Source: Aplysia californica
Lineage: Eukaryota
Reading direction: 5' to 3'
Length of the DNA: 64,000 bases
Assembly: GCF_000002075.1 (NCBI RefSeq)
Contig: NW_004797478.1
Coordinates: forward strand, 446,197 to 510,196
A model generated the notes under the pieces. It saw only the letters and a list, made by a program, of their open reading frames with translations. It had not been told where the DNA came from and did no database searches. Positions 6,778 through 51,952 of the stretch are shown here, piece by piece. Position numbers and translations under genes: made by a program. How positions within the stretch are numbered: the first letter of the stretch is position 1; each line of letters starts with the position of its first letter.

Positions 6778-7366
6778 ATGGCCTTAACAGTGGCCAGTTG
6801 TACTACTCTCCTGAGGACCATATCTAAAAGGGCAAGCACATCACTTGGTGTTGCTATCGGGAAACACCGTCAAGACGATGTAGATGTCTCCATGACAGAG
6901 CGGCTGCAGACATGTAAAAGATTCAATTCATCCATTAGCTGTTATGGTGAAAAAAGTGCCATTAATGACCTTTCACTGGAAACTGTTCATAACACTTTGA
7001 TGAAAAGGAGCAGGACATCTTCTTTGCCAAAGTCAGACTCATGGCAGTATGCTCCAGTTTTTCAGTATCCTAGTCCAAAACTCTCATTGAGTAGCCAACA
7101 CAACATTCCACTTTGTTTGCATCAACATCCAGGCAGCCTAACTTTTTCTACATTCTCCTCAATGTGGACTAATCCCAGTTCAAATACCTCGAAAGCATCT
7201 CACAGCACGCTCAGTAAATCTCATGCAGCCTTACTTCATGTTTGTGATTGTCATCAAAAGTCACACAACAGCATGAGTAGCTTCTCCCCAGCAAGACTTA
7301 TTCTAGAATCGTCCCCAGGAAGTGTTCAACCTTATCTCCGCCTGATTAGATTTGACAAACCAATTG
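6778..7366 (+). CDS. COQ2: COQ2 coding exon 1 (targeting peptide, long Ser-rich extension, ...[13 protein letters not shown])
   Basis: Acceptor ttttctttcgcag ends at 6751, ATG at 6778, donor G|GTAAGG at 7367 (phase 1). Confidence 0.9.
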
Positions 7367-10300
7367 GTAAGGAAGATGTTTAGTCAATTTTTTATTTTTT
7401 ATTTTATTATCTAGTATCTTAAGTAATCATGTAGTGTGCTCTTATTATTAACCAACAGGTGATGGAAATGTTAGTGCCTGAGAGAATGTACAGAAATTGA
7501 AATATAAATAGCGAAAACTGCAGCTGTTGCTTTTAGCATTTTTCATTAAGATTGTAGTTTCATTTTAAAATAAGGATAATTATAAACCAAGCTCATTACT
7601 TTGAAGCTTAGATTAAGTTAGTAATTTTGTTTTCTATACTTTTAACTATAATCTCATACCTTAAACTGTTGTCAAACAGCCTCTATCCATTAACACTTAC
7701 AGTACCGAAGGCTTCTATAGTGAAAAAGACTCAAGTACCACACCAGTTTAGAACGGTGGTAGAATTTTTTTAAAGTAAAAAAACCTTGGCAGCCCAAGAA
7801 ACACACTTTAAAAGTCCATAGAGGTTCATCAACCATTCTGCTGTCATAGAGTGACTTCCTTTGGTATTTACTTCAGTGCAGTGTGTGCATTCGTTGTTTT
7901 CTTATGTTTTGTGCGCCTGGTTGTGTCAGCGACTAAAATCGCCAGCGGTAGTGAGGGCATACTATGGCCTGGCAACTAAATTCGCCGACAGTACTGTAAG
8001 TATTAATGTATTTTAATGTAATTCAGACCTGAGGGGATCCTGAAAGATTCTGTGAGACTGAAAGACCATTTTTTCCCCAGATTTAAGTCTGTATTGCAGC
8101 TTTGAGTCTGCTTTGTCTTTGAAAAGTTTTCATCTACACGTTTGTAGGCTCATAACCTTCCCTTTTATCCTTTTGTCGTCTCTTACAACTTCACTGCATA
8201 TGAAAGAAAAGATTAAACTGAGGGAATGGCTTCATGGAATCCACTTTATTTGCCTGATTTTACCTTATATTAGATAATATGTAGATTCTATCTACAGTTA
8301 GCTAAAAGATGATCATGATCTTACAAAAGCAATTTGTGCCAGTGAAAGTGGAGATGAAAGCAGATGATTGAACATGATTAGAGCATGAAAGGAGGTGAAA
8401 GGAGAACATTTTTCGTTGCTGTCAGATTTCGAACCCAGGACTTATTGAATGAGAGGTGAACACCATACCTTTCGACTATGAGAGCCCAGTCCATTTGCAG
8501 TAGAAGGGAACCATGTGAGAAAATTCATTTAATATGCCTTTTCCAAGGACACAACGTTAGCCGAGCTGAGCTTCGATGCCCCAAACCCGGAATCTCACAA
8601 TTACAGGTCTGGTAGCCTGACCACTTGACTATTGATACAACGTTTTGTTTTCAACCATCCCTAAAAAAAGATGCTAAATTAAAACAGGTGAATTGAGGTG
8701 AAAGTGGTGCCTTATATTTCTTTAAGCCATAATCCTGTTGTTGCAATTGATGCCTTAACTTTCATCTGTGCACTGTTTTCAGGTACATGGCTGCTGTATT
8801 GGCCTTGTACCTGGAGCATTGCCTTGGCTGCCCAGCCTGGCTGTATGCCGGACCCTAAGCTCCTTGCCCTCTTTGGTGCTGGAGCCTTCTTCATGCGGGG
8901 TGCAGGCTGCATCATCAATGACATGTGGGACAAGGACTTTGATGCCAAGGTTAGTTGGATAGTAGAAACTTCAGTTTAGAGTTGGAGAGGGGTTGGGGAG
9001 GGAGAGAGTAAAACCATTTACTGACAACGACTATTTGAAGCTAAAAAAGTCCTAGCAGTCAACCACTGCCCATAAACTGTCCAGTACTAATAGTATTATG
9101 TGGAAAACTGAAAATTTCATCGTGTGTAGTACTTAGATTATGTTTATGATCTTTTTGTTTATGCATCTTGCTGGCCTACTCCAGTTTCTCCTAAATCCTT
9201 CTCATTGGGCTGTTGATTGTCATATTTATTTTCTTTAATGTCATTGTTTTAATTTGACTTTTAGTCAGTACAGAAAAAGATAATTCTTTCTGCTTTGGTT
9301 TTTCAAAGTTGTAGTTGTTCGACACCCAAAAATCTGAAAAGAATAGTTAGGGAAACCAAAATTCAAAATGTATGCTGGTGGTCAGTGGATTTTCTGGTAA
9401 TATTTCCTTTTTCGAAATTGTTGAAGTGTTATTATTACGAACATTATACCTCTGTTCTTTACAAAATATGCCCGTTGTTATCATGCTACAAATCGCCATC
9501 TTTGTGATGTGCAGGTTGAGAGAACCAAGCTTCGGCCTCTTGCTGCTGGAGAACTGACCAGCTTCCAGGCCTTGGTATTTCTAGGCACCCAGCTGAGCTG
9601 TGCCCTCGCCATATTGTTGCAACTCAACTGGTACAGGTGAGCATCTTTCACCTTTGGGCACCTTTGGCTTTTGCATGCAGTAAATGTGAGTTCTATTCTC
9701 ATGTGGGGAAGTCTGGGTTGGTCTTGAAAGATGAGGTGGAAGCAGCCCACCTCTATTGATATGAATTGTGTTGATGGAGATGTAAAAAATTTACAATCAA
9801 TCTAATATGGTATCATTTTTCTGGTTATTTACTAAAATCAAGAAGTCTGGGACAACCTAAACCTTTTTCATTTAGTACAGCTATCAATATTCATATTGAA
9901 TGGCTTGATGATATTCCTGGTCGGTCCTATTGTTAGCAGTCGTTTTGTCATTTCTGTCTGCCAGCCCTTTCTGTCTGTAGACTTGCAGTAAATAACCATT
10001 ACCATGTGTGTGTACTTTGCCTGTACCTCATCAGAGCTATATATTTTTTTTAGGCCTTTTTAAAGCATTTCTCTCTGGTTGTTTCAAATGTCTTGGTATC
10101 CACCTTGATCATGAAGACGACCTTGAGGTTGGGACATTGTTCTTCTCTCTTTGTTATTGATATGTTAGTATTCGTTAACTTTTGTCCTGTTACAAGGAAA
10201 GGGATCTGAGCTGATATCATAGAGAAAACTTTATTATTTCTTACTTATGACAGCATTTTATGAGGAGGAAGAATCAGAATAGAATAGGAAAACTTTACAG

Positions 10301-13300
10301 TTCTATCCAAGTCATAACACAGTATTTTGAGTTCATGTATCTTGAAAGGATATTGTTTGGGTGTTCCACAGTGTTTTACTTGGGGCATCTTCCTTAGGCT
10401 TGGTGATTTTGTATCCACTTGCCAAGAGGTACACGTACTGGCCACAGCTGATGTTGGGTAAGGCTTAATTTTTTTGCCACTAGATTGTTAAGGTTGCCTT
10501 GATCTGGGGTCAAGGGCTCGACCTTCAAAATGTGTATAGTTTGGATTTCGACACTAGCAACGACTCACTCTCTGTCAAGGAATTTAACACAGGCTCTTTT
10601 GAGAAACAAAACCAGAAATTTCTCTTAAATCCTTGATTGTTATCATTTTGGAATTAACGGTTCTCATTATGTTGAAAGTGATTTATATAGAACTTTCCTG
10701 GGCACACAGTAATTTTTTTAATATGGGCTCTTAAAAGTAAAAAAAGGAAAGCAAAACAAAATCAAAATATTTATATATAATGTTGATGTGCACTGTAGAG
10801 TGATTTTATTACTGGTTTAATTTTTTTTTACCTGAGTTGTGCTGGTTGATTTTCCGTACTCATGTTCAGCACTTCTGCAGTATTGATTTTTTTTTCTGAT
10901 AGAAGGTTCACCCAAAGGCCTAAGCCTATTTCTTTTGACCAGCTCTGTCTCACGCAGGATCTACCACATTGCAGCCTTTTATACACACTTGACAATAGCT
11001 TATTCCATCTCCGGCCTTCAGTTAAGTGTTCATTTGAAAAGACATGGACATGGAAAAATAAGGTTAAATTAACCTACTTTCTTGAGAATATTAAGTCTTG
11101 CCACGCCTTCTAAGAAATTGAAACTAAAACCTTTCAGTAAGCTAAGCACCTTAGCCATTTGGGGACTATTAAAGTCCATGTAAATTTTTATTGAACAGCT
11201 GATACTATTATGGTTTTAGGTAAAAGTTTGTAAGTCTGGAATATCATCCCACTTGGTAACATGGAATTAATTATTTTTGCTTTGGACATATATGTGAGGC
11301 AGCGTGGTGGAATCAGGCTCTCGTCAAAATAATCAAAGTGAAAAAACTTGCATTTTTCCGCAGGTTTGTGAACTTTTATCAAATTTTTTTTTTTGGCTGG
11401 ACACCTTTCATGCCCATTAAAGAACTAATTTCTGTGTGGATTTTTCTGAAAAACATTGATTAAATGCACAAAAAATGTAAATTTTCAGTTACCACGGACT
11501 ATTAAGATAAGGAAATAGCTAATCTTTGGCGGCCATTTTCTCACTAATTTTACTTCTGAAAACAGGTGACCCCCACCTCCTTCAATCGCAAATATCTCGA
11601 CTTGTATTCAAGATAAATGGATATTTTTTTCGTCCTAATAAAAACAAGTGAACAAGCTTTAAGATGATACCAATAACTCAACATGCCCAAAAATTGAGGA
11701 GAGCCTGATTCCACCACTCTGCCTCACATATGCCCCTCACACTTACTATTACTTTTACCTAAAACAAATCTGTTGTATATTGTAAATGAGTCTCTCCCTC
11801 ACATACACTCACATACTGAAAGCAAGCATTTTCAGTACAAGTAGAACCCTGAACTTTTGGAGGAGGGATGCTAGGACTCAATGATCATTAGGAGACAAAT
11901 GCTGACAAAACATCAACATGCACCAAAATAGTCATTTAAAAATCACACAAATTGAGAAAGTCTGATGTCTTCTCTAAACCCCCCAAATTATAAAAAAAAT
12001 CCTTATCATACATGTACAATAGTAGTACGGGGGCTCTCATGGCCTAGAGGTTAAGGCGTTGGCCTCTCATTCAAAGGTCCCAGGTTCGAATCTGGGTAGC
12101 GACCAAAAAATTTTCTTCTCTAAAATTGTCTCCTTTCACCTCCTTTCCTGCTTTCTAACAATGTTTTGTTGTCTGCTTTCGTCTCCTCTTTGAAACTCTT
12201 TCTGCCCCCGCCCCCTCCTCTGGGCTCCTGACTCTTTCTGCAGCCTTTCTACTGCTACTCCTTTGCTCCTTCTTACTGCTGTCTTTCAGCCACCTCCCTG
12301 ATCTTCTGGTAAGAAAGATCTACACCTAGCCTTCTTGGACAAGGGCAAAAATTCTCGGAGGGCCCATGTGCAAGTTGCGCACGTTAAAGATCCTTTGGTG
12401 GTCTAAAATGGATAAGAGTAGGCTTCGACCGCATCCCCGGCAAAATTAACAATTTCCTACCAACTAAAAATATGAGGTGTGTCCCGCGCACTCATATGAC
12501 CTTATTTAGTTGCGAGCATCGTAAAACACTTACCCCGTTCGCAAGGTTCCAAATTCCAAACTTCCCTACCAAGAAAAATATCCATACCACACCTGAAAAG
12601 GTAGTAAAATATCCATTACACTTTCCTTGATTCCAAACATTTTGACCATGTCTCTCCATTGAAGTTTACCAAGGAAATGAAGATCTGAAGAGGGGGAGGT
12701 ACAGTGAAACTGGGATACAACAAATTCCGAAAAATCGTATTCAACCCCTTTTTTGAAAGTTCATTAAAATCAAAATAAACACATGAATGAGCAAACTCGG
12801 ATTTAATGAAGCCCCCCCCCCCCNNNNNNNNNNNNNNNNNNNNNNNNNNNNNNNNNNNNNNNNNNNNNNNNNNNNNNNNNNNNNNNNNNNNNNNNNNNNN
12901 NNNNNNNNNNNNNNNNNNNNNNNCCCCCCCCACTGATATTGCTTCAAGACTTTACTCCTGCAACAAAGTTTATCACCTCTATTCCAAGGGACTATCAATC
13001 GGTCCTGCACCATGGGTCATTACATGCTTAGCCTATTGCATACATATTATATGACCAATCAGAAGCTCTCTTTCACATTTCACGCCAACATGTATATGTT
13101 GTTGACACATGTGTAAGGCATGACTTGTCCTAGCATGTGCAGGTGCAGGGATCAGGAGAGGTCACATGGCCGGCCAGCACATGTGTGGCTGTTATTACGT
13201 ATGTCTAGGGATCGGAGGAGCGTTAGCATATGCGTTCCTGGCATGAAACATCTTGCAGATGCGTCACAGTCATACTCCCCTCCCCTCCTCCTGGGCTACT

Positions 13301-16300
13301 GAACAGTGAAAGGCTAGCTTAGACATAGGACTATGTCATGGATTGTGCTCTGATCTTTGGGAACAAGCATTGCCATATGATAAACCCCACACTGCTCACA
13401 TTGATATCACAAACACTCGAATTTAACTAAATTAGAGGTCTGGTCCAACGACTTCAAGATATCCGAGTTTTACTGTAGTACTTGGGCATTCTACTTCCTC
13501 AATGTCGACCCTCCCACGCAAAGCTGTATTATGCCAAAGATCATGTATAACAAGATAGTTCATTCCTCTCTTTGAGCCAATTAGAAATGTGTCCTCAAAA
13601 TTCAGTGGCGTCTTCTTCGAAAAAGCATGGACTTTGCGAACAGAGTTACCCTACTTGTGTGGAACAACAATAAAAGTGAAAATAACAAACTGTGCTATTC
13701 CTATTCTTCTTCTGGAAAAAAGAAAGAGAGCTTCAAAACAAAGACTGCAGTGCCATCTGAAGCAATGTGCAGACTTCCTCTGACACTTTTTTGGCTAGTG
13801 AACAATCTTGTTATGTAGGATCTTTGATTGTACATAATGCTTTAATCATCCAAGTGTCGATGGCCAATTAAATCAGCAGTAAGATTCGCGGCCGATTTAA
13901 TCAGACATAATTTGAGTGGCTGTATTGGTTCGTTTGTCCCATTTTTCACACCACCAAACTTTTTAACTTTTTCACAAATGAGCTCAACTATGTATTTCTT
14001 TTCTACTTTCTGAAAATGTTTACGTTTATGGCCTTTACTTGGCTGGTTTGCCTGTTCTCAAGCATTTTTTCGACATAATATTATGGTTAAATCACATAAT
14101 TTCCCCTGACACCACAGGTTATTTGTTACTGACTTTGTGGGTTAAGATCAACTGTCACAAGGCCAAAGCTGTACAAAAGAGCTATATATGATGTCTACAT
14201 ATGAAAACTCTTAGGAACTACAAATACACCCAATTAGGTGGTAACTTATGGAGTAGACTAATTGACCCAAAGTTTTGATTCCCTCCAACGATATCAGCTA
14301 AAATTTGGCTTTTCTTATTGATTGTAATGAAATTAATTCCTTCCCTGGTCCCATAATGGTACCCCCCTTCCAATAACATGAAGTAAATACTGTTCTTGTG
14401 TAATTACTGACAGTGGTAAATAATTGTTTTTCACTAAAAATATGTAGAATCTGTTATCTATCGAAACACTAGTTGTTGTTTTTTCAGATATGTGTACTCT
14501 GTAGGACACAAGTTCACTGGTATTTGCTTTGAAATAAGAATAGGCATGTTGTTCCACCAGTTCAGTTATTATATTTATAGTATCTTAGTCTTAATGTTCA
14601 CCTTTGATGGCCTCATTTTCCCAGGGCTAACATTAAACTGGGGTGTTCTGCTGGGTTGGAGTGAGATGAGGGGCTCAGTGGAGCTGGCAGCCCTGAGTCT
14701 GTACGCGGCCTGCACAGTTTTTACCATCATTTACGATACCATTTACTCTCATCAGGTATATGCAGTCAGTTGCTATCAGGGTTTTTTTTTTCTCAGGTTT
14801 TGTTTTGTAGTTATGTTCTCTGCTGGTTGTGTATTTCTCATAGATCTTGAGGATGTCCCACTGTTTTGTTTGTTTTCATGCAACATCGCAGTATGATTAA
14901 GAAACATTATTAGATGCCACTGTGGACAGCTTTATTCAAGAAACTTTTTGGTGTATTTTTTTGTCCTTTCTGTTGTCATTTTTTTGGGGTCCTTTTGTTC
15001 CTTTTTTTTTGGTGGGGGGCTGATGAGGATTTTAAAAATATGCGACATTTGGTTAATATAATTAAATTTCATACTGTAGTTATTCAATATTCTGTGATCT
15101 GATTTTGGATTCTTTTTTTTTTTTTTTTTATTTCACCCTTAATACTATACTCTTGTTGATTATTTCAATTTTTGTGAGTGAGGTCTGATTTTTTTTCAAA
15201 GCTTCTTGTCTGCACATCTTGTCTATCATTAAAAAGCTTTATCAAGTTTATTTGATTGTTTTGATAAACCGGTCTATTTATTCGATAGTGCTCTGTGAAT
15301 TTAGAATGTTGAAACTCAACTTTAGAGTTGTATGTAAACTTGGGAAGGATTCCAGTAGTAGTCCTAGATTAAGCATTTCCTTTAATTTCACCAAATTTTA
15401 TCACTTTGAATTCACATGATAATTTGTAGTGTTATGTTTAGCAAAATCTACTCTGTTTTGGTGTAGTAAATGCTCTGTACTGTTAAGAGAACGTACCAAG
15501 TCTTCAAATACCTTCACACACTATGTTTATTGCGTGCTGTCTTTTTTTAAGGGTTGGGGGAGGGGGGGGGAGGGGAACACCATTGCAAAATGAGCAACTT
15601 GCAATGAAATATTTTTTCTTTGTTCTCTTTGACGCAATACAATTCGCCCCCACATGACGTTACAGTCCTGCGTGCGGAAAGTTTGATCCTTGACTCGTCC
15701 CCCTTTTGTAACCCAATAGTTTTTTAAATGACCGAAGTAGGGTATCGACACTGGTAAATGATCTTTCATATCTCTGAGCATTGCGTGCGTGTGTTTGTGT
15801 TCTTAATTTGAAGTACAGTGTTATAGTTATCCCTGCTCTCCATGGGGAAGTAGGAATAGGACCTCAAAGAGGGTATCTACTTATCATTTTATGTTGGATA
15901 TCAATGATTTATCCACACACACAACGCAGGTGTACAAAATACATAATACATCAGTGATTGCTATAACCTGCCCAAAACTTCTTTCAAGTGTACACTCATA
16001 AAAATCTGTTTAAGCCCAGTGACACAACAGTGACGCTAGCTTCATTAAAGAAAAAAGTGGGGGGGGGGGGGGGGGGATTTCATGGTCAGCTTCTCCGACT
16101 GGTAACCTTTTTTTTTTTGACCGGGGGAGGGCGAATTCAAGACCCCCCCCCCCCTCCTCTTTAAGTGGGTGGGAGTTAAGGGGGTGGGGGGGGGGGAGGG
16201 GGGAATACAAATTGATGCACGTGAAAGAAGCACTAAAAACGAAAGGTTGTCATTTGCAGTTGAGACTGATGTGTTTGTTGGGTCAAGTTTTTTTCTGTGC

Positions 16301-19300
16301 ATGTTGAAAAAAAATCTTCACTGCATTTATCCACTCAACCCAACTGTCTTTTAGGTTATGATTGGTGATGGGTCTTTGTTGTGCTCAGGATTTCTCAATC
16401 CCACACCTCTTTGAACGAACTTTTCTCCCTGAAATATAATATTATATGAGCCACATTTTGTAAGTCTTTGCCGAGAGTGTGCTTGACAAATTGTAAATGA
16501 GTATTGTGCTTTGTCAAGAAATGTCTGTGTGGCATAGAATAAAATTTTCTGAAGTGCTTTGAGTGGCAAAACTAAAGAATTGGTCCTGAAATAGGTCTAT
16601 TACATACTTGACACTTTTGCAAGTTTGGAAAGAAACAGTTAAGAGTATGCAAAGGAGGTTACAAAGTAGTGAGGCCTGTTCTTTAGTTTTGCTCTTTGAG
16701 TTTTCTACACTCCATATGCATGAAGCCTGAAGCCGTTTGTTCATACTCAAGTGTTTCCTATGTTATTTTATAACAAAGTTTACAACCTTTTGATGCTAAA
16801 TTAGAGAGGAATATGCTTCAGATTTCTTTTAGCTTCTGTTGTTAGGGGATATTTTTATCTTTCTGTAGTGTGTAAAGAACATTCTGTTTTTCGTGTGTCA
16901 GCTCAACTTATGTGTTGTGACATTGCCATTTATTGGCTTTTTTTTCTGCTGCATTGCACCTATCGCCACCTATTAGCCTTGTAGGTCATTTTTCTGTTGC
17001 TTTTCTGTCATAGACAGCTTCATGCTAGATTTGCTGTACAGTGTAGATCCACAGTGAATCTCTGTTGAAAGTGTAAAATGGAAAGGATAGTAAAAAAGAT
17101 ATCTGTGACTTGTTAAACCTGTGCCATTTCTAATGGGACCTGGTGGATTTCATACGTTTTTAAAATTGCTTTTGAAAATATTTTTCATGTTCTTACTTTT
17201 GGAAACAGGAGGGGGGGGGGAGGGAGTTGGTTGTTTTCATACGTCATTTTATTAAATAATGAGTTGGGTTTTTTAAATTTCCAACCAAAATTTGTTGTGG
17301 ATTCCTACTGAATTTGTTCTGTGTAAAGCATTTGCTGACGCGTTGTATTCTGAGACTGGCATCTAAGAATTTATCTCATGCTTTATGAAGACTTATTAGT
17401 TTTCAAGTCCATTTTTTCTTCATAAGTTCTTCTATAAAATTTTAGGTCTTTATCCTTTTGGTGACTGACTGCATGTACAAGTGGAAACCCATAAATTGTA
17501 CTATAATCATATTTATGTTTATCAAGTTTAGTTATTTCTTTCTGGTTCCTGGCTTTTTATTGTGATTTTGTCACTCAAGGAAAACCACATTTTATTTTGA
17601 ATAACGGAATGAAGTAAGTGTAATTGAGATGAGGTCAACCAGATTCCTATGTTTACCACTGGGTCTGTGGCAACAAAAACAATTATCTTCAGACTTTTTA
17701 TCTGTTATGGCAGGGACTTTTTTGAACAGCATTTGAGTTTTCTAATAACATTGCAATCAATCAATCTCAATTGTTTCTCTTTTGTGGTCTTTTTTGCTTT
17801 AAAAAGATATAGATTTTGAAACTTTCTAATATACGGCTTACTAAAAGTAAATGGAAACGTTTGTTGTTTGATAGTAGTCTGGTGTCCAGGACTGTCGTTT
17901 CCTTTTGAGGTACGCGGAACTTTAGAGCAGATATGTGGAGGGAAGATGCTGTGGGACATTTATATCAAAGTATTTTGTGGACAGCAGTGGGGCATCCTTG
18001 TTTACTGGTAATGTGGTTAGGCTCACTATCAAATTAGGGCTCTCCAGGTCTAGAGGTTATGTTATTCACCTCTCATTCAATAGGTCCTGAATTCGAAACC
18101 TGATAGCGACAGAAAATTTTTCTTCTCCGTATTTTCTCCTTTCACATCCTTTCCTGCTCTCCAACCATATTGTGTCGTCTCCTTTCTTCCCCACCCCCCT
18201 CCCCCCTATTTTTTTGCACCCTCCTCTAGGCTCCTGACTCTTTCTACTGCTACTCCTTTTCTCCTTCTCTCACTACTGTCTTTCAGCCACATCCCTGATC
18301 TTATGGTAGGTAAGATCTAACATCTAGCCTTCTCGGATAATGGTGAAAAAATCTCTGAGGTCCCATGTGCAAGTTGCGCCCATTGAAGATCCCTTGGTGG
18401 TCCTAAAATTAATAAGAGTGGGCTTCGGCCGCCACCCAGGCAAAATTCATAATTCCTACCAAACTGTTTAATGTGTCCTGCGCGCTCATATGACCTTTTG
18501 CAGTTGCAAACATCGTAAAACACTTACCAACCCCCCCCCCCCCCCCCCCCCCCCCCCCATCAAATATGGTTTTAATTCCTTGCAAAGTATAGGAAAGATT
18601 CTTTGCCTTATTTTTCCAAGTTCACCGAACTGCAAAGGAGTTCATTGCCAGGTTCATAGCCTACCTGTGTATGTGAATAAGAGAGTAAGGTTCTTAACAG
18701 GCTGCAATGCTGTATATTTCCCAAGGATTTGAAGCAATGAAAGATTGTCATTATGAAATCAAATGGGCTTTGAGAGGGTTACAAAACTTGGTGATATGAC
18801 CTTTTGATTTGAAAATTCATTGCTTCGAAGCTAATGACTTTATGGGCCAACTTCCCGCCCATACTTTCTCGCCCCTTCTTGTAGGGTTCACATTCAACTA
18901 TGGGGCTCTGCTGGGTTGGTCGGCTGTTCAGGGATCCAACGATTGGTCCGTCTGCCTGCCCCTGTATTTCTCTTGCGTTTTGTGGACTTTGGTATATGAC
19001 ACCATTTATGCCCATCAGGTAAGGCCACTGGTAGAAGTGGTAGAAGTAGAAACTGGACCATAACATTTAGGTATGCCAATAGCAACCCTCTCCCGCTTCT
19101 TTTAGCCTTTGGAATTGCCTACAATTGATTTTCTGCTTGTAGTTACATATATATTATAATAATTCAGTGCTTTTTTGTTCCTTCCTTTTTGCTGTCTATC
19201 TAGATTTATTTTCCTGTTAGTGTTTGGAATTTCTTTCACTTTCTTAAATATGAATTAAGTGGGACTTAGTTTTAGTGGATAGGCAATCTAGTGTACAGTG

Positions 19301-22300: not shown

Positions 22301-25300
22301 ACAAGTGGTTTGGGTTTTTTTTAGTTATAAGTATGAACTGTTATGATTCAGTATGGTGAGTTCCCATTCTACCTGACCCATTCATAGAAACTTTTTCATC
22401 GAAAATCTTTTATAAATTTTTTTTTTTAAATATTTTTTTAAAAAATCTATATAATACAATTCTGGTGGTTCAATCTTTGCGTCTTAAGAAGAAACCACAC
22501 GCTTTTCCAACCTCAAAATCTAAACAGAACATTCAATATGCCTAAGAGCATGATGGAGCCAGATTTTTATTGTTTTTAACGTAAGAATTTATTAAACCTT
22601 ATCCATACGTCGTGTTTTACTATCATATCCATACCACATGGGAAACTCTGTGCCACCACTTTCCAAAGGGTAAATTTACTCGTTAATCCGATCGGTACGC
22701 TTTGCATAGCAGTCTCTCAAAATGATTTTTTGAGAAATACTGAAAGTTTCATAGAGATCTTTGGACTAGAAGTCTTCTCAAATGTGAAGAATACAACCAT
22801 GGGGGTACAAAGTGACCCCAGGGTATACGAATAGGGTTAAATTGTAAATTTCAATTGCTACATACATTGGAAGTCGGATTCAACGAAAACTCGGATTCAG
22901 CAAAAGGAGTTGGATTTCCTGGGGGGGTGGTTATTCATAAAAATCAATAAAAATAACTCAGAGTCAACGAACACATAAATGAGCAAGCTCAGATTCAACG
23001 CAGTCGCTTGCAGTTGCAGGAACAACAAAAGGAGACCTCCTTCTTTTTCTTTCCTCATCCTTACTATCATCATTTTACCTCTACTTCTTTTGTATGTTTG
23101 TCTCTCTCTTTTGAACTGCTATTTCTGGGGTGCCTTGATAGTCGAAGCAGACTTTGTACTGTTGAGGCTATAGGGGTGAGCAGAGTAAGCCTGATTCTCC
23201 GTTTGGACTTCTCTATTGACATCCACTCATTGGTGCTCATTTGATCTTATGCAGTTGCTAGCACTGTAAAACTGTACTAAAACTAAGCAGTTGCAGGGTG
23301 AACAGTCCCCGCTGACATGGCTTTGCCACTTTGCTCATTTTTCTCCCGAAGTGAACCATATCTAATCCTGGAAACCATCTATGGTACTGCATCGTAAACC
23401 ATTATTCTCTTTACCGTTTGGTTTATATCTTATGCGACTAATCAGCGGCCTTCTTTCGTACCAACACACATGTTGTTAGCATGCACGCATGCGGTTAAGA
23501 ATCTAGAGGAGCAATACCTCAATAAAAAACACCAGTCCTGTGGCTGACCATCTGCCATAAGGATACACAACTGTAGGTCAATCAACCTTACACAAATCCT
23601 AATCTCACAGTGTACCTACTACGTGCTAATGGGATAAATGGCTATAGGACTAAGTAGTCGCTAATGTTGGCTTCTAAGCAAAAGGGATGGCGCCAGGCGT
23701 ATGGACTCTGTAAGGACATCCCCTGTCCCTTCCCTGGTATAGGGCTCTGCCAGGGTGACTGTTTTTTTCTCTACCTTAGAAAAACCAAACATTAGTAAAA
23801 GTTTAGAAAATCTAAAAAGGAAACGGCGCAGGAGCAAGGGAGAACGTGCTCCTTTTGCAAAGCTCTCTCCTGAATCATTGCTGAGGACTGAGGGTAGGAG
23901 AGGGAGGAGGAGAGGAAAGAGAGGAGTTGCTAGTAAAAGAAGAACAGGGTAAAGAAAGAATCAGGGAAAAACAGACAGGCTCAAAATGGAAAACATCTGC
24001 ATTGGCTATTGGAATTGCCGCAGACTTCTTTAATTTGCAGGAGACCAATTCTAAAACCTTTTCATGTCCTGGGTACACGTCATATATATCAACCCAGTGA
24101 GCCCGACTCATCGTGTATCAGCCACACTGGTTAGGAATGGTAGCCTACACTGGGTAAGAGGCGTCTCTGCTTGGGACAAGGAGGACAGGGAGCTACAATC
24201 ACTTGAGCTAACGATCCGCAACAGGTCATGGGTCATTGTTAATCTCTATGCTGGAGGTGGAAAACTTGTCAAGGAAGATGACTGGGAGTTTCTCCATGAG
24301 CTATGCGATCTTGGAGATGTTGTCCTAATTGTTGGGGACTTCAATGCTAGAAGCTCGGCCTGGGGCCATGTCAACGAAAATGGTCAGGGAAAAGCTTTAG
24401 ACAGCAAGTTGATTGAAAGTGATCTCCACATCGTCAACATTTCCACCATGACAAGACTATATCAAAGAACTGGCGAGCAGGACTCCAATATTGATCTGGC
24501 CCTGATCAAAACAAGTGGCGAAGCTTTTACACAATGGAGTGTACTGGCAGATCATGGTAGCGACCACCTGCCATGCTCAGTTCTAATACAGTCCGTGCCG
24601 GCTATAAGCACGCCGGCCTTAAGCACGTTTCGGACTCAAGCACGCTAAACGGCTCTTACTGAATTTTTGCTATATAAATTACACCCCTATAAGCATGGTA
24701 ACTTCGGCTTCAAGCACGCTTCATTTACAAGGCAGTCAATATTTTCATGATGACCCATCGAAGTTCGAACACAGTTTACACCGCAACAGTGGAGTGTGTC
24801 AAGAGAAACACAAAGAACGCAAGTGATGGACACACACACTCGCACGGGCGGAGAGGAAGGCAAAGAGATGCACACAGCCGTTCGTGCGGACATAGGATCT
24901 AGCCTAGGCCTAGGGCAAAGCTACACACGATCCAAAAAAAAAAAAGGGAGTCGGGGAGATGAGAAAGGGAGGCTGGCTGCGATTTCACCTTTGACCCTCG
25001 CTACCCATTAATCCTGATTGTGTATCACGCGCGAGGTGGGATGGAGGCGGTGGTATGAGTGACACAGCGGGCAGTGGTACGCACAGGCAGTGTGTTACAG
25101 TAGGCCTAGTGTGCTGTATCGTGGAGTCTAAATTAAGTTTTCATTTCCCATTCGACCACAAACAAAAACAAACAAGCGAACAAAAACTACCATGGCGGGT
25201 GTCTAAATAACAGTGCACACTTTTGTGGGACCACTACAGGCCTACTTACAAACAAAGGGAAATAGCACGGGGAATTTTCTACATGAAGATCTCTGGATTA

Positions 25301-28300
25301 TGTCTACTTCGCACTTAAGCACGCTTCGGCTTTAAGCGCGCTTAAGCTTTCTCCCGATGACCGTGCTTAAAGCCGGCATGGACTGTAATCAAAGGGTGCA
25401 AAGGCAGTGAAACAAAAGGTCAAGAGGGTGTTTAAGTACAAACCAGACACCTCGGCCTTGGGAGGCCTGAGAAAGAAAACCTGGAACAGAGAACCTTTAA
25501 GATCTAATGTTGCACAGCCACCATTGTGGAGCAAGGAAATTGATTGCCTGTGGAAAGAGAAGAGGAAAGCTGTTAAGGACTTGCAAAGAAAGAGGAAGAA
25601 ACCCAATGTCACAGGAAGAAAGGGAGGCAGCTAAAGAGAAGATGAGGCAGGCTCGAGATAAGTTCAAAGCTGAAGCAGATAGGACTTAAAAGACAAAGTG
25701 GGAAGAGTTTGTGAAAAACATTGCAGCTGAGAAGGCACTCTCAAAGTTCTGGAAACTGCAAAAGAAGATATGTGGACAGGGTCACTCAAAAACCACCGTG
25801 AATGTGAAGGACGAGTCAGGAAAGACACTCCAAACTGATGAAGAGAAAGGAAGGGCTTTCTTGGACCGATTCATACGTCAAACACACCTGGGAAATATAG
25901 ACTCAAGAAAGGAAGTTGAAAGAGATATTTCAAATGCGCTGACCCCACAGATGTATGCAAACTACGAGGATGCGAAGAGGTTTCCCGAACATTAAAACAT
26001 GCCTATGACAGTGCTGGAGGGCAGAATAGTGTAAGGTATTGCCGTATGAAAGAAGCAGACGATGAGATGATTGAAGAAATGACAAAAAACTTCAACATGA
26101 GCACTGGCACTGGCAAAATCCCTGAAGAATGGTTGCACAGCTCTTTGAAACCAATCCCCAAACCAAGAAAAGACCATTCGGCTCTCAGTGGTTACTGGAT
26201 CATAGCCATGCAGAACACCTATGAGAAAATTCTGGACGGATATCAGCACACTTTGAGAAGAAGTCACCGTTACCAAATGAGCTTGGCAGCTATAGACCCC
26301 ATCAAGAAACTGCTGTGAATGCAGCAGTCGTGGCGTATGACATCTATGAAGGCTTTCAGCAGCGGAAGAAAACAGTTGTGATGGCACTTGACCTTGAAGA
26401 TGCTTACAACCGGGTCAACTATGAACGTTTGATCGACGGCCTCCTGGAATTTGATGTGGACATATGGCTGATAAGATGAGTAGCTGTAGCCCTAGTGGAG
26501 AGAAAAATGGCTCTGAGACGGGGTGAATGGACTTCAGATCCCATATCAATTTCTCCAGGATTGCCCCAAGGATCCCCCCTTTCTCCTGTGCTTTTCAATG
26601 TGTACACTTCACAGGTAATGATGCATCAGAAGGAATCTGGACGTGTCCTGAGCTTTGCAGATGACTTAATGGCATACAAGCACAGAGATGACAGACTTCA
26701 GCTGGCAAGGAACATGGAGAAAAGATTTCACTCTGTTGTTAAATGGTACGACCAAAATGAAGCAGTTATCCATCCTTCAAAAGCAAAGGTACTTTGGTGT
26801 TCCCTCGTAACAGGATTGTTCAAGACATAACTCCTCCAATCACTTTCAACTATGAGGTTATCGACAGACAGTCAGAGCTGAAGTATCTGGGAATAGCATG
26901 TGGATCATGTTGTTACAAAGGCCAATGTGGGTGCAATCAAGACCATGGCAGCCGCTCTGACTCTACAAAGAGTGCTCTTCCTGATGTTGCAGCTGGTCGT
27001 CTTATCTGTCATTGATTACGGATTGGACTGTCTCACTCTGTTTGACACACAGATCACAAAGCTGGATTGAATGCAGAATGAGGTAATGAGAGCATTGCTG
27101 GGCTGCACCAAGGACACTCTAATATTGTACATGCGCTTCTTGCTAGGTTTAAGTGGCATCAGAGTATGCCGTAGGATAGCGCAAGCAAAGATGTATCTAA
27201 GTGTAATGGGCAAGAAAGATCATCCACTACACAAAGTACTTCATGACAAAAAGAGAGGCAGAATCAAAAGAGGAAAATCTTGGATGGCAGAAGTAGAGGA
27301 TTCTCTCAGTAAAGTCTGTGTACCTGAAAATCTACCACTTGGCGAAGAATGGACACAGGTGGCAGAGAATACAGGGACCTCACCTAGGTCGAAGTAAGCA
27401 TGGGCAGAGACAGAAGAAATGTTGCAGCTTCCGTCAACGAGAGTGATATCATCGAGATTGTTGACAGAAACTCGAAAGCAGGCGATCTTGTAATTTATAC
27501 AGATGGCTCAGTGAAAAGAGATAACCAACTAAGTGGATGGGGATTTGTTGCATTCCCAACAATAAAATCATCCACAGTGCATCTGGAGCCTGCAGCAGGG
27601 CTACATCAAATATGCGAATGGAAATTGAAGCCATCACGAAAGCACTTGAATGGATGGCCCAAGATCGTCCCCACACAACCCATGCTGTTCTCATCACAGA
27701 TTCCATGTGTACCCCTAGAAAGATCGAAAAAGGTTTCCAGAGACCAGAATGGATTCAACTGATTGAAGCAACGCCAATAAGATCGCTCACATGTATTTTC
27801 TGCCCTGGCCATGCAGGCAGTAAAGGAAATGAAAAAGCCGAGAGACTGGCTGGTGAGGCCACCTCAGTAGACATCATGGTTCAAGCAGACAAGGTCGATA
27901 TCCTGAAATGTCTCTCTCGCCACCTGATTAAAGAGGAAGATAAGGAGGCAGAGGCCAGTACTGCTGTGGAGAGGATAATGGTTTTGGGAGTACAAAAAGG
28001 AAGCAGAAAATCTGGCACCCTTAAAGGAAAGAACAGAAGAACATTCAACCAGATATGCACCGGCACAATCAGTAGAAAGGTCCTCGCAACTTTTTGGAGA
28101 GAGCAACGATGCATCAATGGACATGTCCGGAATGCAAGGATGTTGCTTCCTGAAACAATGGAACAATATAGATGATAGATGACACAGGCGTACATTTGAT
28201 AAAATTGGCCGTTTTGCACTGTGTGTGCTTGGTAGTGTTCAGTGTATTTTCCTGGAATTTTCCAGCATTTCTTCGTATGGCATCATAGAAACTAAAATTC

Positions 28301-31300
28301 CTCTCTATTGAAACCAAAGTACTTTTGGTTGAGAAAGTCAAATACATTATACATTATACATTTCTCGCTTGGTGCCTGTAATTATCTACACAAAAACCTT
28401 ATGTTTGCTATAACAAACTCTCGGATTGAAGGAAATTGAAGGTCAAGCCTGACGACTTTGCTGAATCTGAGTTCCACTGTATGTTTGTGAAATACTCCAG
28501 AATTGAGACATTGATTTCCTATTCCACTTTTTAAAATTCTGTTCAGTATTGGCTCACAGCTGCATAGGTAAAAGCATACGGGAATCTCTAATGCATGCTT
28601 TACTTACTGCCGACTCTGTATTATTATAAAATGTTGAACAAGACGCTTTTTTAAAGAAATTAACTATAAATGTCCCATGTATTTCAAGTGTTGAGACTTA
28701 CCATACGACAATTTGTTCTATTCTCTAGTGATCCAACCCCTTGCTGTTTAAAAAGCTATTTTTTGTGTGTATAATATGACACTTTTAGAGGAATGAATAA
28801 AACGGCAAAGATGTGTGTGGGGGGGGGGGGATTGGATTTTTTTAAATAATTTGTTTGAGGTCCAAATATCTATACATATGAGATATAATTCTGGTGAAGC
28901 CGACCTTTGCGTCACTTTTTAGAAGAAGCCAGACACTCTTCGGAACTCGAATTTTAAATGAAGGTACCTCTAACCTTCGAGCTAAAGAATTATAAAGCTG
29001 TATGTTTTGATCACAGTGGATTGTTATGAAATACTCCAGAATTGAGCTACTGCTTTACAATTCCTCTTTTAATAAGAAATGTGCGTGTCGGCTATTCAGT
29101 ATAGGTTCAAAGTTGGTTAGTGAGTTTAGGTTCACAATGTCATGTGTATGTCTGTGACACAGCTTTTAGGTGGGAGGTCATTTGGATGGGTCCTTGAGCA
29201 ACACACAATAACCCTAACTTAGTTTAAACAGGGCACTGCACAGTGGTGACCAGCAATTGTGTGCGGATTGTCATTGTTTGTGACATTGTGTATTATTCAT
29301 GCATTTTATTTATTTATTTGTGTGATTATGTGTGTTATCATAAAACAAATTTCCCGCCAGATCAGTAAAGTGGAATTTATGTTTATTTTTATTCTTTATT
29401 TAGTTTATATTATATTCCAAAGACACAGTAACATCCAGACTTTCGTCAATTAGGCGTGCCTGTAATGGCAGTCGAAAGTGATACATGATGGTCAGAGCCC
29501 TGAGTTTTAGGTTATCATGCCAAAAGTATGTGGGCTGTCAGTTATTATATACTTGCTGTCATGCCCCATGCATAAATGATGTGCTGACTTGTGTGTGCTG
29601 GGGAGGAGGGGATTTGTCAGGTGGTTTGAATTAGCATTTTAGTATGTTATGAAGGACTACTTTATGGTTCTTTAGAGTACTGAACGACCTTAATTGTCTG
29701 ATGGCTTTTAAAAATTCCTTTATTGAAATGTGTTAGAAAGAAAGACTTGAAAGGATTGCAATAACTTTTTTTATACACTTATTGACTTAAATATAAATCT
29801 AATGTTGTTTTATTTATGTAATTTAGAATATACATGTAAGTGTTTCTAGCAGCAGATAGATTTATGCACTCATGTAATCACTGTTCTGTTTAAAAAAGCA
29901 TTTTGTTGCACTTCAACTGCACTTTTATTGGAGCTCTATGAAGCATCTAAATGTGTTGAAAGAGGTGAATTGATAAAGAGTTCCTTGGCAAAAACTCACT
30001 TGTCCTATATGGCAAGAAAGAGAAACATAGCTTGTTTTCCCCATACTCATGTTTTAGCTTCGAGTTACAGTCTGTAAATTAATTTCCATTGTCACAAGTC
30101 ACAATGTCTGACCACTTTTGGAAAATTTTTAGAAATTCTACTGTTTGTGGCAGACATGTTTTCTCATTTTTCTCCTTTCAAAACTTGTGGACAAAATTAA
30201 AATAGACTTTGTCATGGAACTATTCATACGTATGTCTCAAGGTAGAAATTTGTACCACTTTCTTGTTTGTTTATTACAGTATAAAGCATTGAGTTTTTGA
30301 GTCTTAAAGAAAACAACCAATGTTTCAGGACAAATACGATGACATGCTGATTGGTGTGAAGTCAACAGCACTCAAGCTTGGAGACAACACAAAGCCTTGG
30401 CTGTATGGTTTTACTGCCCTTATGTCGGGAGGGTTAACCACAGCTGGTTTAATGAATGATATGACTTGGCCTTACTACGCTGCCGTTGCCATCACATGTG
30501 GAAGGCTGGCTCAGCAGGTAGAGTGGGGAGTCTTGAACATCGTAGCAGTAACAGTGGGGGATTCGTTAGGTGGCAAGTTTTACCTCATTGAGGATACACA
30601 TTCTGGTCATTCAACAATGCTTTAATGTTCTGTTTTGAGGCATAACTTTAGTATTATTTAAACAGATTTTGCGAATTCGTTTTCTTTATCTGAAACTTTA
30701 AAAGGCATACAACAACATGCATACCATGAAGTATGCAAACTCGTGTTTCTGATTTGAGAATGATGGTTCAAAATGTGCCGAAACATTTCCTCTCTCTGCT
30801 GCTGATTGGACACATGTGTCTGCTCTACGTCCTGAAAGAGTAAAAAGAGTTTAGATTTGCCATCATGGGTGGTTGGCGGGTGCTCTGGTGTGGTTTGCTC
30901 CTTCTTTCCTATCAAACATCTATCATCTTTTTCTCCCTTCCTTTTATTTTGTTTTGTTACTCTCTTGTAACACCTCTATTCTTCAGCACTTATATGACCT
31001 TATTGTGTTGCAAGTGCCATAAAACTCTTACTAAAAAGATTTGCCATCACTCTGATTCATCAGTTACTACACAGGTCTTTTATTGACTCACAAGGTCATA
31101 CAAGAATGGGCTAATGACCTGGAGTGGCTGGGTCATCAAGTAATAACAACAAAGGGTACCTATGATAATAATATGTACACTTGGAACATTTTTGGGTGTT
31201 TTTTATTTGTATATCTTGACCGTATTTTATTGAATTTTCTAATTGCACTTTTAAAATCAACTGTTTCATGTAAGAATCTGCCAAAATCCATTTTGAAAAA

Positions 31301-32405
31301 TGATATAGGTATTACAGAGTCTTACGCTGAGCAGTCGAATTGCGCACATGGTCACGAAAAATTTGCTTCATTTTCGTCAATTAGAATTAATTTTTAAACC
31401 TTGCAGTGAGCATGTCTTATCTAAAAGTTTTTGAAGTTATAGTGATAGTTTGTAGTCTTATCCTTTCCAATTGAGTGTTTTTTGTGTGGACACTTGAAAC
31501 AGACTTTTGGACTGAGATGGTTTGACTTTATCATCTTTGAGGAACTATTGCCCATTAAAAGGAAGATAAAAAAGGAAGCAACATGATAGAGAAGATCATG
31601 ATTGATCAGACTTGCATATGTTTAGTAAATCGGTGAGTGACAAGTATAAACTTGAAAGGCTTCTGAGATGGTTAGAGGAGCAGAGGAAAACCAAGAACAA
31701 GGGAGAGAAAGATAGAGGCAAAAGCCGAGACACTAGTCTAAATAATGATGATGATAATAATAATGATGATGATGATGACAATAATAAATGATATTTTTGT
31801 ATGGCGCAAATTCTTGCTCAACAGTGAGCTGTATATTTTTTCCCCTGCAGACCTGATAGCTTTCTGAAACCATCTCAACTTCCTTGGAAGCATACAGTGC
31901 AAGCTTCCATTTTACAGGCTCTAAATCACTAACACACTGACAAGATCTTTTGCTGTGTATGTCCATATCCATTCACACTTGGTGAAGTGAGGAAAATTGT
32001 GTTCCCCAAGAATACATCGTTGAGCCGATCTGAGCTTTGAACCTCTGAACCCACAACCTCATTAGAATTCTAGAAGTGAAAGATTCATAGGACAGACATA
32101 TTTTGGAGTACTTTTTTGATGGCTTGTACTCGTTATGGAGTTTGGAGGTTTGAAGGCAAGAGAAGGGGGCGGGGGGGTTGGGTTTTTGTGCATCTTGTTT
32201 TTTTAACTTTTCTTATGTTTAAAGTGGTTTTTGTTTCCTTTTTCAGACATACTCGGTTGATCTGAATAGTGCTGATGACTGCGCCAAAACTTTTCGGGGT
32301 AACTTCTACCTAGGGGTTGTGATGTTTGTCGGCATTATCATGGCCAACATTCAGAAGTCTAAGCGACAAAGGGCTGACGATGACGGATTTGAAGTGGACG
32401 CTTGA
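6778..32405 (+). CDS. COQ2: 4-hydroxybenzoate polyprenyltransferase, mitochondrial (UbiA family), whole gene: join(6778-7366, 8783-8949, 9515-9636, 10372-10457, [14625-14755 OR 18885-19018], 30329-30517, 32247-32405); 480 or 481 aa
   Basis: All junctions are GT-AG and phase-compatible. Motifs [26 protein letters not shown] (first Asp-rich motif), [24 protein letters not shown] and YDTIY(A/S)HQDKYDD (second Asp-rich motif), GVKSTAL. Confidence 0.97.
7694..8002. mobile_element. piggyBac-like MITE
   Basis: TTAA-CACTTACAGTAC ... GTACTGTAAGTA-TTAA termini. Confidence 0.6.
8375..8488 (-). mobile_element. 5' fragment of the SINE family found at 12029 and 18037
   Basis: Reverse complement GGGCTCTCATAGTC...TCTCATTCAATAAGTCCTGGGTTCGAAATCTG matches the heads of those copies. 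Confidence 0.7.
8783..8949 (+). CDS. COQ2: COQ2 coding exon 2 (167 nt)
   Basis: ttttcag|GT ACA TGG...GCC AAG|gttagt; [13 protein letters not shown]...[12 protein letters not shown]. Confidence 0.97.
9515..9636 (+). CDS. COQ2: COQ2 coding exon 3 (122 nt)
   Basis: gtgcag|GTT GAG...TAC AG|gtgagc; [40 protein letters not shown]. Confidence 0.96.
10372..10457 (+). CDS. COQ2: COQ2 coding exon 4 (86 nt; not in ORF track)
   Basis: ttccacag|T GTT TTA...ATG TTG G|gtaagg; [30 protein letters not shown]. Confidence 0.95.
11293..11728. mobile_element. Tc1/mariner-type MITE
   Basis: About 35-bp TIR TGTGAGGCAG(C/A)GTGGTGGAATCAGGCTCTC(G/C)TCAA flanked by TA. Confidence 0.8.
12029..12536 (+). mobile_element. 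tRNA-derived SINE (family 2)
   Basis: A box TGGCCTAGAGG, B box GGTTCGAATC; colinear with the copy at 18037-18528. Confidence 0.85.
12702..13475. mobile_element. Tigger/pogo-like MITE spanning the first gap
   Basis: TA-CAGTGAAACTGGGATA ... TATCCGAGTTTTACTG-TA. Confidence 0.6.
12824..12923. other. Assembly gap (100 N) within poly-C
   Basis: Seen directly. Confidence 1.
14625..14755 (+). CDS. COQ2: COQ2 alternative exon 5, rhodoquinone type (COQ-2e-like), 131 nt
   Basis: ttttcccag|GG CTA ACA TTA AAC TGG...TAC TCT CAT CAG|gtatat; [44 protein letters not shown]; Leu at 14633-14635 and Ser at 14747-14749. Confidence 0.92.
18037..18528 (+). mobile_element. tRNA-derived SINE (family 2)
   Basis: Colinear with 12029-12536 and ends in the same CATCGTAAAACACTTACC. 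Confidence 0.85.
18885..19018 (+). CDS. COQ2: COQ2 alternative exon 5, ubiquinone type (COQ-2a-like), 134 nt
   Basis: cttcttgtag|GG TTC ACA TTC AAC...TAT GCC CAT CAG|gtaagg; [45 protein letters not shown]; Phe at 18893-18895 and Ala at 19010-19012; branch-like GCTAAT at 18830-18835. Confidence 0.95.
19296..19780. mobile_element. Tigger/pogo-like MITE
   Basis: TA-CAGTGGAAACC..ATATAACTG ... CAGTTATATCAGGTTTTCACTG-TA. Confidence 0.75.
21091..21438. repeat. Head-to-head inverted pair of a dispersed SINE-like repeat
   Basis: 21091-21249 is a reverse copy and 21263-21438 a forward copy of the repeat also seen at about 6535-6700 and 30865-31035. Confidence 0.7.
21916..22154. mobile_element. piggyBac-like MITE
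   Basis: TTAA-CTCTTTATCTCCG ... CGGAGATGAAGAG-TTAA. Confidence 0.75.
22596..22836. mobile_element. piggyBac-like MITE, uninterrupted copy of the family at 637-3833, opposite orientation
   Basis: TTAA flanks; internal sequence is the reverse complement of 637-764 plus 3688-3833. Confidence 0.8.
23035..23282 (+). repeat. Dispersed SINE-like repeat shared with 56875-57120
   Basis: Near-colinear TTTCTTTCCTCATC...GAACTGCTATTTC...GCAGACTTTG...GTGAGCAGAGTAAGCCTGATTC...TACTAA. Confidence 0.7.
23700..28175 (+). mobile_element. Decayed LINE (I-group; Ingi/Nimb-like) with APE, RT and RNase H
   Basis: APE: [21 protein letters not shown] (24064-24588). RT: [33 protein letters not shown] (26046-26900). 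RNase H: [25 protein letters not shown] (27400-27860). Many frameshifts and stops; the 5' boundary is approximate. Confidence 0.9.
24589..25385. mobile_element. Tigger/pogo-like MITE inserted into the LINE just after the APE domain
   Basis: 24-bp TIR CAGTCC(G/A)TGCCGGCT(A/T)TAAGCACG; TA TSD at 24587-24588 and 25386-25387. Confidence 0.9.
30329..30517 (+). CDS. COQ2: COQ2 coding exon 6 (189 nt)
   Basis: tttcag|GAC AAA TAC GAT GAC...CAG CAG|gtagag; [25 protein letters not shown]...RLAQQ. Confidence 0.96.
32247..32405 (+). CDS. COQ2: COQ2 terminal coding exon 7
   Basis: tttttcag|ACA TAC TCG GTT GAT...GCT TGA; [52 protein letters not shown]. Confidence 0.92.
   Translation, partial: TYSVDLNSADDCAKTFRGNFYLGVVMFVGIIMANIQKSKRQRADDDGFEVDA

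Positions 32406-51907: not shown

Positions 51908-51952
<45 letters not shown>

What the first reader, a model, noticed from the sequence alone, without database searches (positions are those of the whole stretch)
14625..19018. Mutually exclusive COQ2 exon pair: a ubiquinone/rhodoquinone splicing switch for anaerobic mitochondria
Seen: two paralogous, stop-free exons with identical splice phases (1 in, 0 out) lie between COQ2 exons 4 and 6. They share 23 of 45 aligned residues by hand alignment. The upstream exon reads GLT-L-NWG...YDTIY-S-HQ and the downstream exon GFT-F-NYG...YDTIY-A-HQ. In the 134-nt exon the Phe and Ala are 39 residues apart. Established: in C. elegans coq-2, exons 6a and 6e are mutually exclusive; COQ-2a (F204/A243) prenylates 4-hydroxybenzoate for ubiquinone, and COQ-2e (L204/S243) accepts kynurenine-pathway 3-hydroxyanthranilate for rhodoquinone, the low-potential carrier used in fumarate reduction (Tan et al. 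2020, eLife; also reported there for helminths, annelids and molluscs). Inference: this animal makes RQ and can run malate dismutation under hypoxia, controlled by this exon choice (L325/S363 versus F325/A364 in my model). The mechanism is known; a single-isoform annotation would miss it in this genome.
Basis: partly seen in the sequence, partly recalled or inferred. Interest (0 to 1): 0.92.

Follow-up and report, generated by a model that had tools for sequence, protein, structure and literature searches.

The report
Sea hare's two-way quinone exon switch
The sea hare Aplysia carries the same pair of swappable COQ2 exons that worms and snails are known to use to choose between the ordinary respiratory quinone and a low-oxygen one, so this is a real but expected example of a published switch.

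Summary
Observation confirmed; the mechanism is already published. The window is Aplysia californica COQ2. Exon A (14625-14755, 131 nt, L325/S363) and exon B (18885-19018, 134 nt, F325/A364) are paralogous (23/45 aa) and have identical phases. RefSeq already holds both isoforms (480 and 481 aa), which differ only here. RNA contigs from two studies have exactly the lengths expected of an exon4>(A or B)>exon6 bubble. Order and lengths equal the e/a pair that Tan et al. 2020 list for Biomphalaria, oyster and Capitella. Exon A groups with e-type exons of molluscs and nematodes. Kynurenine-pathway genes are present. Not shown for Aplysia: rhodoquinone itself, substrate preference, hypoxic regulation, malate dismutation. 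Side leads: ribbon worms carry the pair (a phylum not in Tan's list); a short-exon tree fits a single origin of the e-exon; Nematostella has two tandem COQ2 genes, one with L/S; Aplysia has two divergent SDHC genes. The scan noted other mutually exclusive exon pairs in this genome, but not this one on other DNA.

The parts
6778..7366 (+). COQ2 exon 1, coding part (long N-terminal leader, probably the mitochondrial targeting part, to the DKPIG motif)
   Evidence: 100% match to residues 1-197 of RefSeq P0001/P0151; GT donor at 7367
8783..8949 (+). COQ2 exon 2 (first Asp-rich motif)
   Evidence: AG..GT
9515..9636 (+). COQ2 exon 3
   Evidence: AG..GT
10372..10457 (+). COQ2 exon 4 (common upstream exon)
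   Evidence: AG..GT
14625..14755 (+). Alternative exon 5e (A): e-type, 131 nt, L325/S363; donor GTATAT departs from the consensus
   Evidence: RefSeq isoform X2 XP_005099332.1; spliced contigs in runs X17 and X20; tree
18037..18530 (+). Interspersed SINE-like repeat in the intron between the two exons; not part of the switch as far as tested
   Evidence: 14,539 first-look candidates in the genome, the scored ones about 79% alike; other copies at 12031-12534 and 8348-8487; related copies abundant in RNA
18885..19018 (+). Alternative exon 5a (B): pan-eukaryotic a-type, 134 nt, F325/A364; donor GTAAGG
   Evidence: RefSeq isoform X1 XP_005099330.1; spliced contig in run X17
30329..30517 (+). COQ2 exon 6 (common downstream exon, completes the second Asp-rich motif)
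32247..32405 (+). COQ2 exon 7, coding part; 3' UTR probably runs to the AATAAA at 33359

Best explanation
Aplysia's single COQ2 gene makes two polyprenyltransferases by including either exon 5e or exon 5a. SHOWN: both exons are spliced between exons 4 and 6, one at a time; the proteins differ only in residues 323-363/364; the e-exon is conserved across gastropods, bivalves, ribbon worms, a fluke and nematodes. KNOWN FROM C. ELEGANS: the swapped stretch is two helices of the enzyme core; deleting the e-exon abolishes rhodoquinone (RQ); F204L plus A243S in the a-exon restores RQ-dependent cyanide survival. INFERRED FOR APLYSIA: the 5a form prenylates 4-hydroxybenzoate for ubiquinone, and the 5e form prenylates kynurenine-derived 3-hydroxyanthranilate for RQ, which lets complex II run as a fumarate reductase when oxygen is short. 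Including both exons or neither shifts the frame and gives a stop early in exon 6, so such messages are probably removed by nonsense-mediated decay. Whether oxygen, tissue or stage sets the ratio is open.
For: Layout identical to the published mollusc and annelid pair: e 131 nt upstream, a 134 nt downstream. Both diagnostic residues match worm 6e and 6a (read by hand). RefSeq X1/X2. X17 unitigs of 183 and 163 nt, with 27 and 23 unaligned flanking letters on the first, equal the k=31 bubble prediction, whereas A joined to B predicts 28. The X20 contig of 2013 nt holds A, has no depth on B, and its length fits an end about 10 nt before the poly(A) signal. Matching isoform pairs in Biomphalaria, Physella, Pomacea, Patella, Gigantopelta and Bradybaena. 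L+S occurs in 1 of 119 segments of a control set of mostly vertebrate, cnidarian and insect COQ2. KYNU and two IDO loci are in the genome; TDO, AFMID, KMO, KYNU and HAAO orthologues are listed for A. californica in PMC9481534 Table 1. An Ldh_2-type dehydrogenase, the class Lautens et al. link to RQ makers, is present. Two-residue sufficiency: PMC8659336.
Against: No RQ measurement, hypoxia series or enzyme assay for Aplysia turned up. The e-exon and RQ are not strictly coupled: siboglinids keep the exon without most kynurenine genes, and RQ is reported in sponges and vertebrate tissue without it. The Ser site is not invariant (Bradybaena and Tubulanus are L/A). Aplysia 5e keeps the a-like Gly at column 11. 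Neither Aplysia SDHC has the Gly or Phe of nematodes or flatworms at the quinone site. The raw RNA runs X23 and X24 had no reads on either exon. Contig flank letters were not displayed, so the junction partners are deduced from lengths.
Confidence: 0.85

Rival explanations
1. The pair is the RQ/UQ switch, but the exon choice is fixed by tissue or stage rather than driven by hypoxia. RQ is kept as standing cover for emersion, sulfide or poorly oxygenated tissue, and full malate dismutation may be minor. This is a variant of the best explanation, not an exclusive alternative.
For: C. elegans makes 30-50% coq-2e at all stages. One Aplysia run shows only 5e and another shows both, with no sign that either was hypoxic. 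No acetate:succinate CoA-transferase domain was found (low sensitivity).
Against: In Strongyloides the same larval stage shifts from under 20% to over 60% e-form inside the host. The sample conditions of X17 and X20 are hidden, and contig depth measures expression poorly.
Confidence: 0.45
2. The e-exon is conserved for another purpose in Aplysia, such as a different aromatic substrate or tuning of ubiquinone output, and little or no RQ is made.
For: Siboglinids keep the exon without a canonical 3HA route. Aplysia 5e sits on a longer branch than 5a (0.29 against 0.07). There is no direct RQ data for this species.
Against: L and S are both intact, they suffice in worms, the 3HA pathway is present, and molluscs as a group are reported to contain RQ.
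Confidence: 0.12
3. Exon A is a decaying duplicate or an artefact of assembly or prediction.
For: Non-consensus donor (GTATAT); no raw reads on it in two RNA runs.
Against: Spliced contigs in two studies, a RefSeq isoform, an open frame, orthologous exons in more than 20 molluscs. The two raw runs also lacked exon B.
Confidence: 0.01

Closest known systems
coq-2 e/a mutually exclusive exons of Biomphalaria glabrata, Crassostrea gigas and Capitella teleta (Tan et al. 2020, PMC7434440, supplementary file 3)
   Same: Same exon position, order (e then a), lengths (131 then 134 nt) and residues (L/S against F/A); Biomphalaria RefSeq X1/X2 differ over the same 41/42 residues.
   Different: Only the species and the intron sizes (4.1 kb between the exons against about 1.6 kb). 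Aplysia is not named in that paper.
C. elegans coq-2 exons 6e/6a
   Same: Same switch and diagnostic residues (L204/S243, F204/A243); function tested there by deletion and by two-residue swap.
   Different: Both worm exons are 134 nt; Aplysia 5e is one codon shorter, as in other molluscs. Function is untested in Aplysia.
Alvinella and siboglinid COQ2 e/a exons (PMC12403961)
   Same: Tandem e and a exons with transcript support in relatives.
   Different: Siboglinids lack most kynurenine-pathway genes; Aplysia has them.
RquA route to rhodoquinone (bacteria, protists, freshwater sponges; bioRxiv 10.64898/2026.04.08.717022)
   Same: Same end product.
   Different: Converts ubiquinone directly with an unrelated enzyme; no splicing switch. 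Not searched for in Aplysia.

Membership tests
COQ2 (UbiA prenyltransferase, PF01040) | UbiA domain with two Asp-rich motifs; orthology to COQ2 | tested here: met
   RefSeq name and best hits
coq-2 e/a splicing switch | Two tandem paralogous exons at the core-helix position with equal phases | tested here: met
coq-2 e/a splicing switch | e-exon has Leu and Ser where the a-exon has Phe and Ala | tested here: met
   L325/S363 against F325/A364; worm exons
coq-2 e/a splicing switch | Both exons used in mRNA, one at a time | tested here: met
   Unitig lengths fit the bubble and not an A>B join; RefSeq X1/X2. Junction letters were not displayed; rare double inclusion is not excluded.
coq-2 e/a splicing switch | e-exon is homologous to known e-exons, not a fresh local duplicate | tested here: met
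   Groups with mollusc and nematode e-exons, apart from Aplysia 5a; one clade is not rejected without the two diagnostic columns; 43-45 columns only
Animal RQ pathway | Kynurenine route to 3-hydroxyanthranilate (TDO or IDO, AFMID, KMO, KYNU) | tested here: met
   KYNU and IDO found here. TDO not found and KMO inconclusive in my exon-wise searches, but RefSeq orthologues are listed in PMC9481534.
Animal RQ pathway | RQ present in tissue and dependent on the e-isoform | not testable with these tools
   No paper found for Aplysia
Animal RQ pathway | e-form share rises in low oxygen | not testable with these tools
   Run conditions are coded; contig depths only
Malate dismutation | RQ-adapted complex II and end-product enzymes (e.g. 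acetate:succinate CoA-transferase) | tested here: inconclusive
   Two SDHC paralogues, neither with the nematode Gly or flatworm Phe; PF02550 and PF02317 searches gave no candidates, and such searches also missed TDO

The most novel reading that the evidence does not exclude
The Aplysia e-exon descends from one exon duplication older than the nematode-spiralian split, so COQ2e-based rhodoquinone synthesis is ancestral to protostomes. It would then have been kept in ribbon worms (not previously listed) and lost in arthropods, while the sea anemone Nematostella reached the same Leu/Ser pocket separately through a whole-gene duplication. This would answer the single-versus-repeated-origin question that Tan et al. 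left open and predicts RQ in nemerteans and in a cnidarian. The evidence lies mostly outside this window and rests on a 45-column tree.
Probability: 0.4. Interest if true: 0.55.

Novelty: new member of a known kind. Interest (0 to 1): 0.2.

Why it matters
For Aplysia, a standard model of neurobiology, it names which RefSeq COQ2 isoform is the likely rhodoquinone form (X2) and gives a two-junction assay for anaerobic mitochondrial capacity in neurons and other tissues. It does not change what is known: molluscs, including a fellow gastropod, were already shown to have this pair. The comparative side results (ribbon worms, a possible single origin, the Nematostella paralogue) matter more than the locus itself.

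Tried and rejected
Third exon copy or second COQ2 gene: none. Exon A joined to exon B: predicts 28 unaligned letters, 23 were seen, and X20 has no depth on B. Steric exclusion: the exons are 4,129 nt apart. Minor-spliceosome incompatibility: all sites are GT-AG with ordinary donors. Docking/selector pairing: blastn between the three introns found only same-strand repeats; short pairings are not excluded. Raw RNA runs X23 and X24: no reads on either exon, so uninformative. Run X17 is labelled as another organism but showed 0-1 differences over the listed intron pieces, so I did not count it as a related species. Nematode-only profiles ranked A over B on the e-profile (61.1 against 55.4) and B over A on the a-profile (77.6 against 67.1), but A's absolute score was higher on the a-profile, so this is weak support only. 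Genome searches for TDO, KMO, octopine dehydrogenase and acetate:succinate CoA-transferase were too insensitive exon by exon. A row labelled Nymphaea (two tandem domains) and the upstream Helobdella segment were left out of the trees.
Full report
1. Observation. Exon A is 14625-14755 (131 nt) and exon B is 18885-19018 (134 nt). Both have AG before and GT after, enter in phase 1, leave in phase 0 and are open in that frame. They share 23 of 45 aligned residues (score 129; 5000 shuffles gave a mean of -18 and a maximum of 20) and 78 of 134 bases. Each matches the same positions, 123-164, of Pfam UbiA. No third copy exists in the window or genome. The other strong UbiA loci of the genome are different genes. 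The full gene has seven coding exon positions, from 6778 to 32405.

2. Organism and annotation. A search with exon A returned a 480-aa public protein containing it at 100% identity. It is Aplysia californica COQ2 isoform X2 (XP_005099332.1); its cluster partner is isoform X1 (481 aa, XP_005099330.1 and others). Both map exon by exon onto the window, share residues 1-322 and the last 117, and differ only over 323-363/364, with L325/S363 against F325/A364. An attractin gene in the genome fits Aplysia. So the public annotation already holds both forms, without calling them a and e.

3. Both exons are used, one at a time. In run X17 a 183-nt contig covers exon A with 27 and 23 letters left over, and a 163-nt contig covers exon B. 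For a de Bruijn graph with k=31 in which exon 4 leads to A or B and both lead to exon 6, the predicted A branch is 28+131+24 = 183 nt with 27 and 23 unaligned letters. The B branch, cut where a retained-intron path forks, is predicted at 163 nt, and the intron path at a start of 18990; all three were observed. A join of A onto B would leave 28 letters, not 23. In run X20, another study, a 2013-nt contig holds exon A and there is no depth on exon B. Its downstream length would end it near 33,350, about 10 nt before an AATAAA (the script assumed an exon 7 start 3 nt too early). Contig depths in X17 were 35 (A) and 22 (B), a rough sign that the e-form is not minor. The flank letters were not printed, so the partners are deduced from lengths. 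Two raw RNA runs had no reads on either exon and say nothing.

4. What it is. Tan et al. 2020 (PMC7434440) describe mutually exclusive coq-2 exons, a and e, with Phe204/Ala243 switched to Leu/Ser in the e-form; deleting 6e removes almost all rhodoquinone in C. elegans. Their supplementary table lists oyster, Biomphalaria and Capitella, each with a 131-nt e-exon upstream of a 134-nt a-exon, the same layout as here. Read by hand, the worm exons in their supplement carry L...S (6e) and F...A (6a) at the same motif positions. Lautens et al. 2021 (PMC8659336) showed that F204L plus A243S in exon 6a restores RQ-dependent cyanide survival. Substrate preference for 3-hydroxyanthranilate is the authors' inference from genetics.

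5. Conservation. L/S exons occur in more than 20 gastropods and bivalves. Isoform pairs differing only over this stretch are annotated in Biomphalaria, Physella, Pomacea, Patella, Gigantopelta and Bradybaena. Aplysia A shares further e-type states: Val at column 8 (39 of 39 e rows), the one-codon gap, and loss of the Trp at column 34. It keeps the a-like Gly at column 11. Among 119 segments of a control set of mostly vertebrate, cnidarian and insect COQ2, 111 were F/A and one was L/S. In a tree of 74 exon segments, e and a fall on two sides of one branch (support 91/88), with a fungal and an alphaproteobacterial sequence on the a side. Without the two diagnostic columns the quick tree needs two changes, but one e-clade is not rejected (p-AU 0.84). 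With 43-45 columns and possible convergence, this fits a single origin but does not prove it.

6. How it most likely works. Exon 4 is spliced to 5e or 5a and then to exon 6. Double inclusion (265 nt) or double skipping shifts the frame and gives a stop about 20 or 11 nt into exon 6, well upstream of the last junction; removal by nonsense-mediated decay is inferred. Steric exclusion is ruled out by the 4.1-kb spacing, and no long pairing between the introns was found. The donor of 5e (GTATAT) is further from the consensus than that of 5a (GTAAGG), which would suit a regulated exon (inference). By homology, 5a yields ubiquinone and 5e yields rhodoquinone from 3-hydroxyanthranilate. The supply route exists: kynureninase and two IDO loci were found, and PMC9481534 lists A. 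californica orthologues of TDO, AFMID, KMO, KYNU and HAAO. An Ldh_2-family dehydrogenase is present in several copies.

7. What is not shown. No paper in the library reports RQ, fumarate reduction or a hypoxic splicing shift in Aplysia. The exon does not guarantee the pathway: siboglinids keep it without most kynurenine genes, and the Ser site is less diagnostic than the Leu site (here Bradybaena and Tubulanus are L/A). RQ is also reported in animals without the exon. Aplysia's two SDHC genes lack the nematode Gly and the flatworm Phe at the quinone site. 'Malate dismutation under hypoxia, controlled by this exon' is therefore plausible, not established.

8. Verdict. Real, expressed, conserved and explained: a further molluscan member of a switch published in 2020, with both isoforms already in RefSeq. 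Interest 0.2. The leads worth a person's time lie elsewhere: the pair in ribbon worms, the single-origin signal, and two tandem Nematostella COQ2 genes, 84% identical, one L/S and one F/S, where other cnidarians checked are F/A or L/A.

Noticed in passing
L003:6001-8642 and L003:10911-14636 (Nematostella vectensis; P0274, P0297): Two tandem whole COQ2 genes, 84% identical. One has Leu and Ser at both e-type sites in an otherwise a-like 45-residue stretch; the other has Phe and Ser. Both persist in the newer RefSeq. Other cnidarians checked are F/A (Hydractinia L/A). Since L+S suffices for RQ-dependent survival in worms, this may be a convergent RQ enzyme made by gene duplication. No paper found.
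   Followed up: partly
P0216/P0276 (Lineus longissimus), P0203/P0277 (Tubulanus polymorphus): Ribbon worms have RefSeq isoform pairs differing only over this exon: L/S or L/A (44 aa) against F/A (45 aa). Nemertea is not among the phyla listed by Tan et al..
   Followed up: partly
G000:C937:66100-68610 (-) and 74630-77190 (+); L008, L009: Two divergent SDHC (complex II cytochrome b) genes, head to head, 47-60% identical in the exons compared. One reads S-L-T-H-R-V-T-G at the quinone site, the other S-I-T-N-R-V-A-A. Could be a tissue- or oxygen-specific subunit; untested.
   Followed up: partly
window 18037-18530, also 12031-12534 and 8348-8487: An approximately 490-nt SINE-like repeat, very common in the genome (14,539 first-look candidates) and abundant in poly(A) RNA from younger copies. 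A Meta-domain SINE is my guess from memory and was not confirmed.
   Followed up: partly
window 24064-28175 (+) and 37475-39522 (-): Broken LINE-type retrotransposons: endonuclease, reverse transcriptase and RNase H pieces in the intron between exon 5a and exon 6, and an endonuclease-bearing piece downstream of the gene.
   Followed up: no
window 50945-61851 (-): Exons of a WASH1-like gene (WAHD domain, proline-rich C-terminal part) on the opposite strand.
   Followed up: no
P0007/P0153 (Bradybaena similaris): The land snail's e-exon has Leu but Ala at the second site, in line with the Alvinella paper's remark that only the first residue is diagnostic.
   Followed up: yes
P0242/P0286 (Liolophura sinensis): The chiton has a 477-aa F/A isoform and a 521-aa isoform with about 44 extra residues just before the a-exon; possibly a model that includes a diverged e-exon. 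Not examined.
   Followed up: no
G000:C228, C39, C2962: Several Ldh_2-family (archaeal-like malate/lactate dehydrogenase) loci.
   Followed up: no
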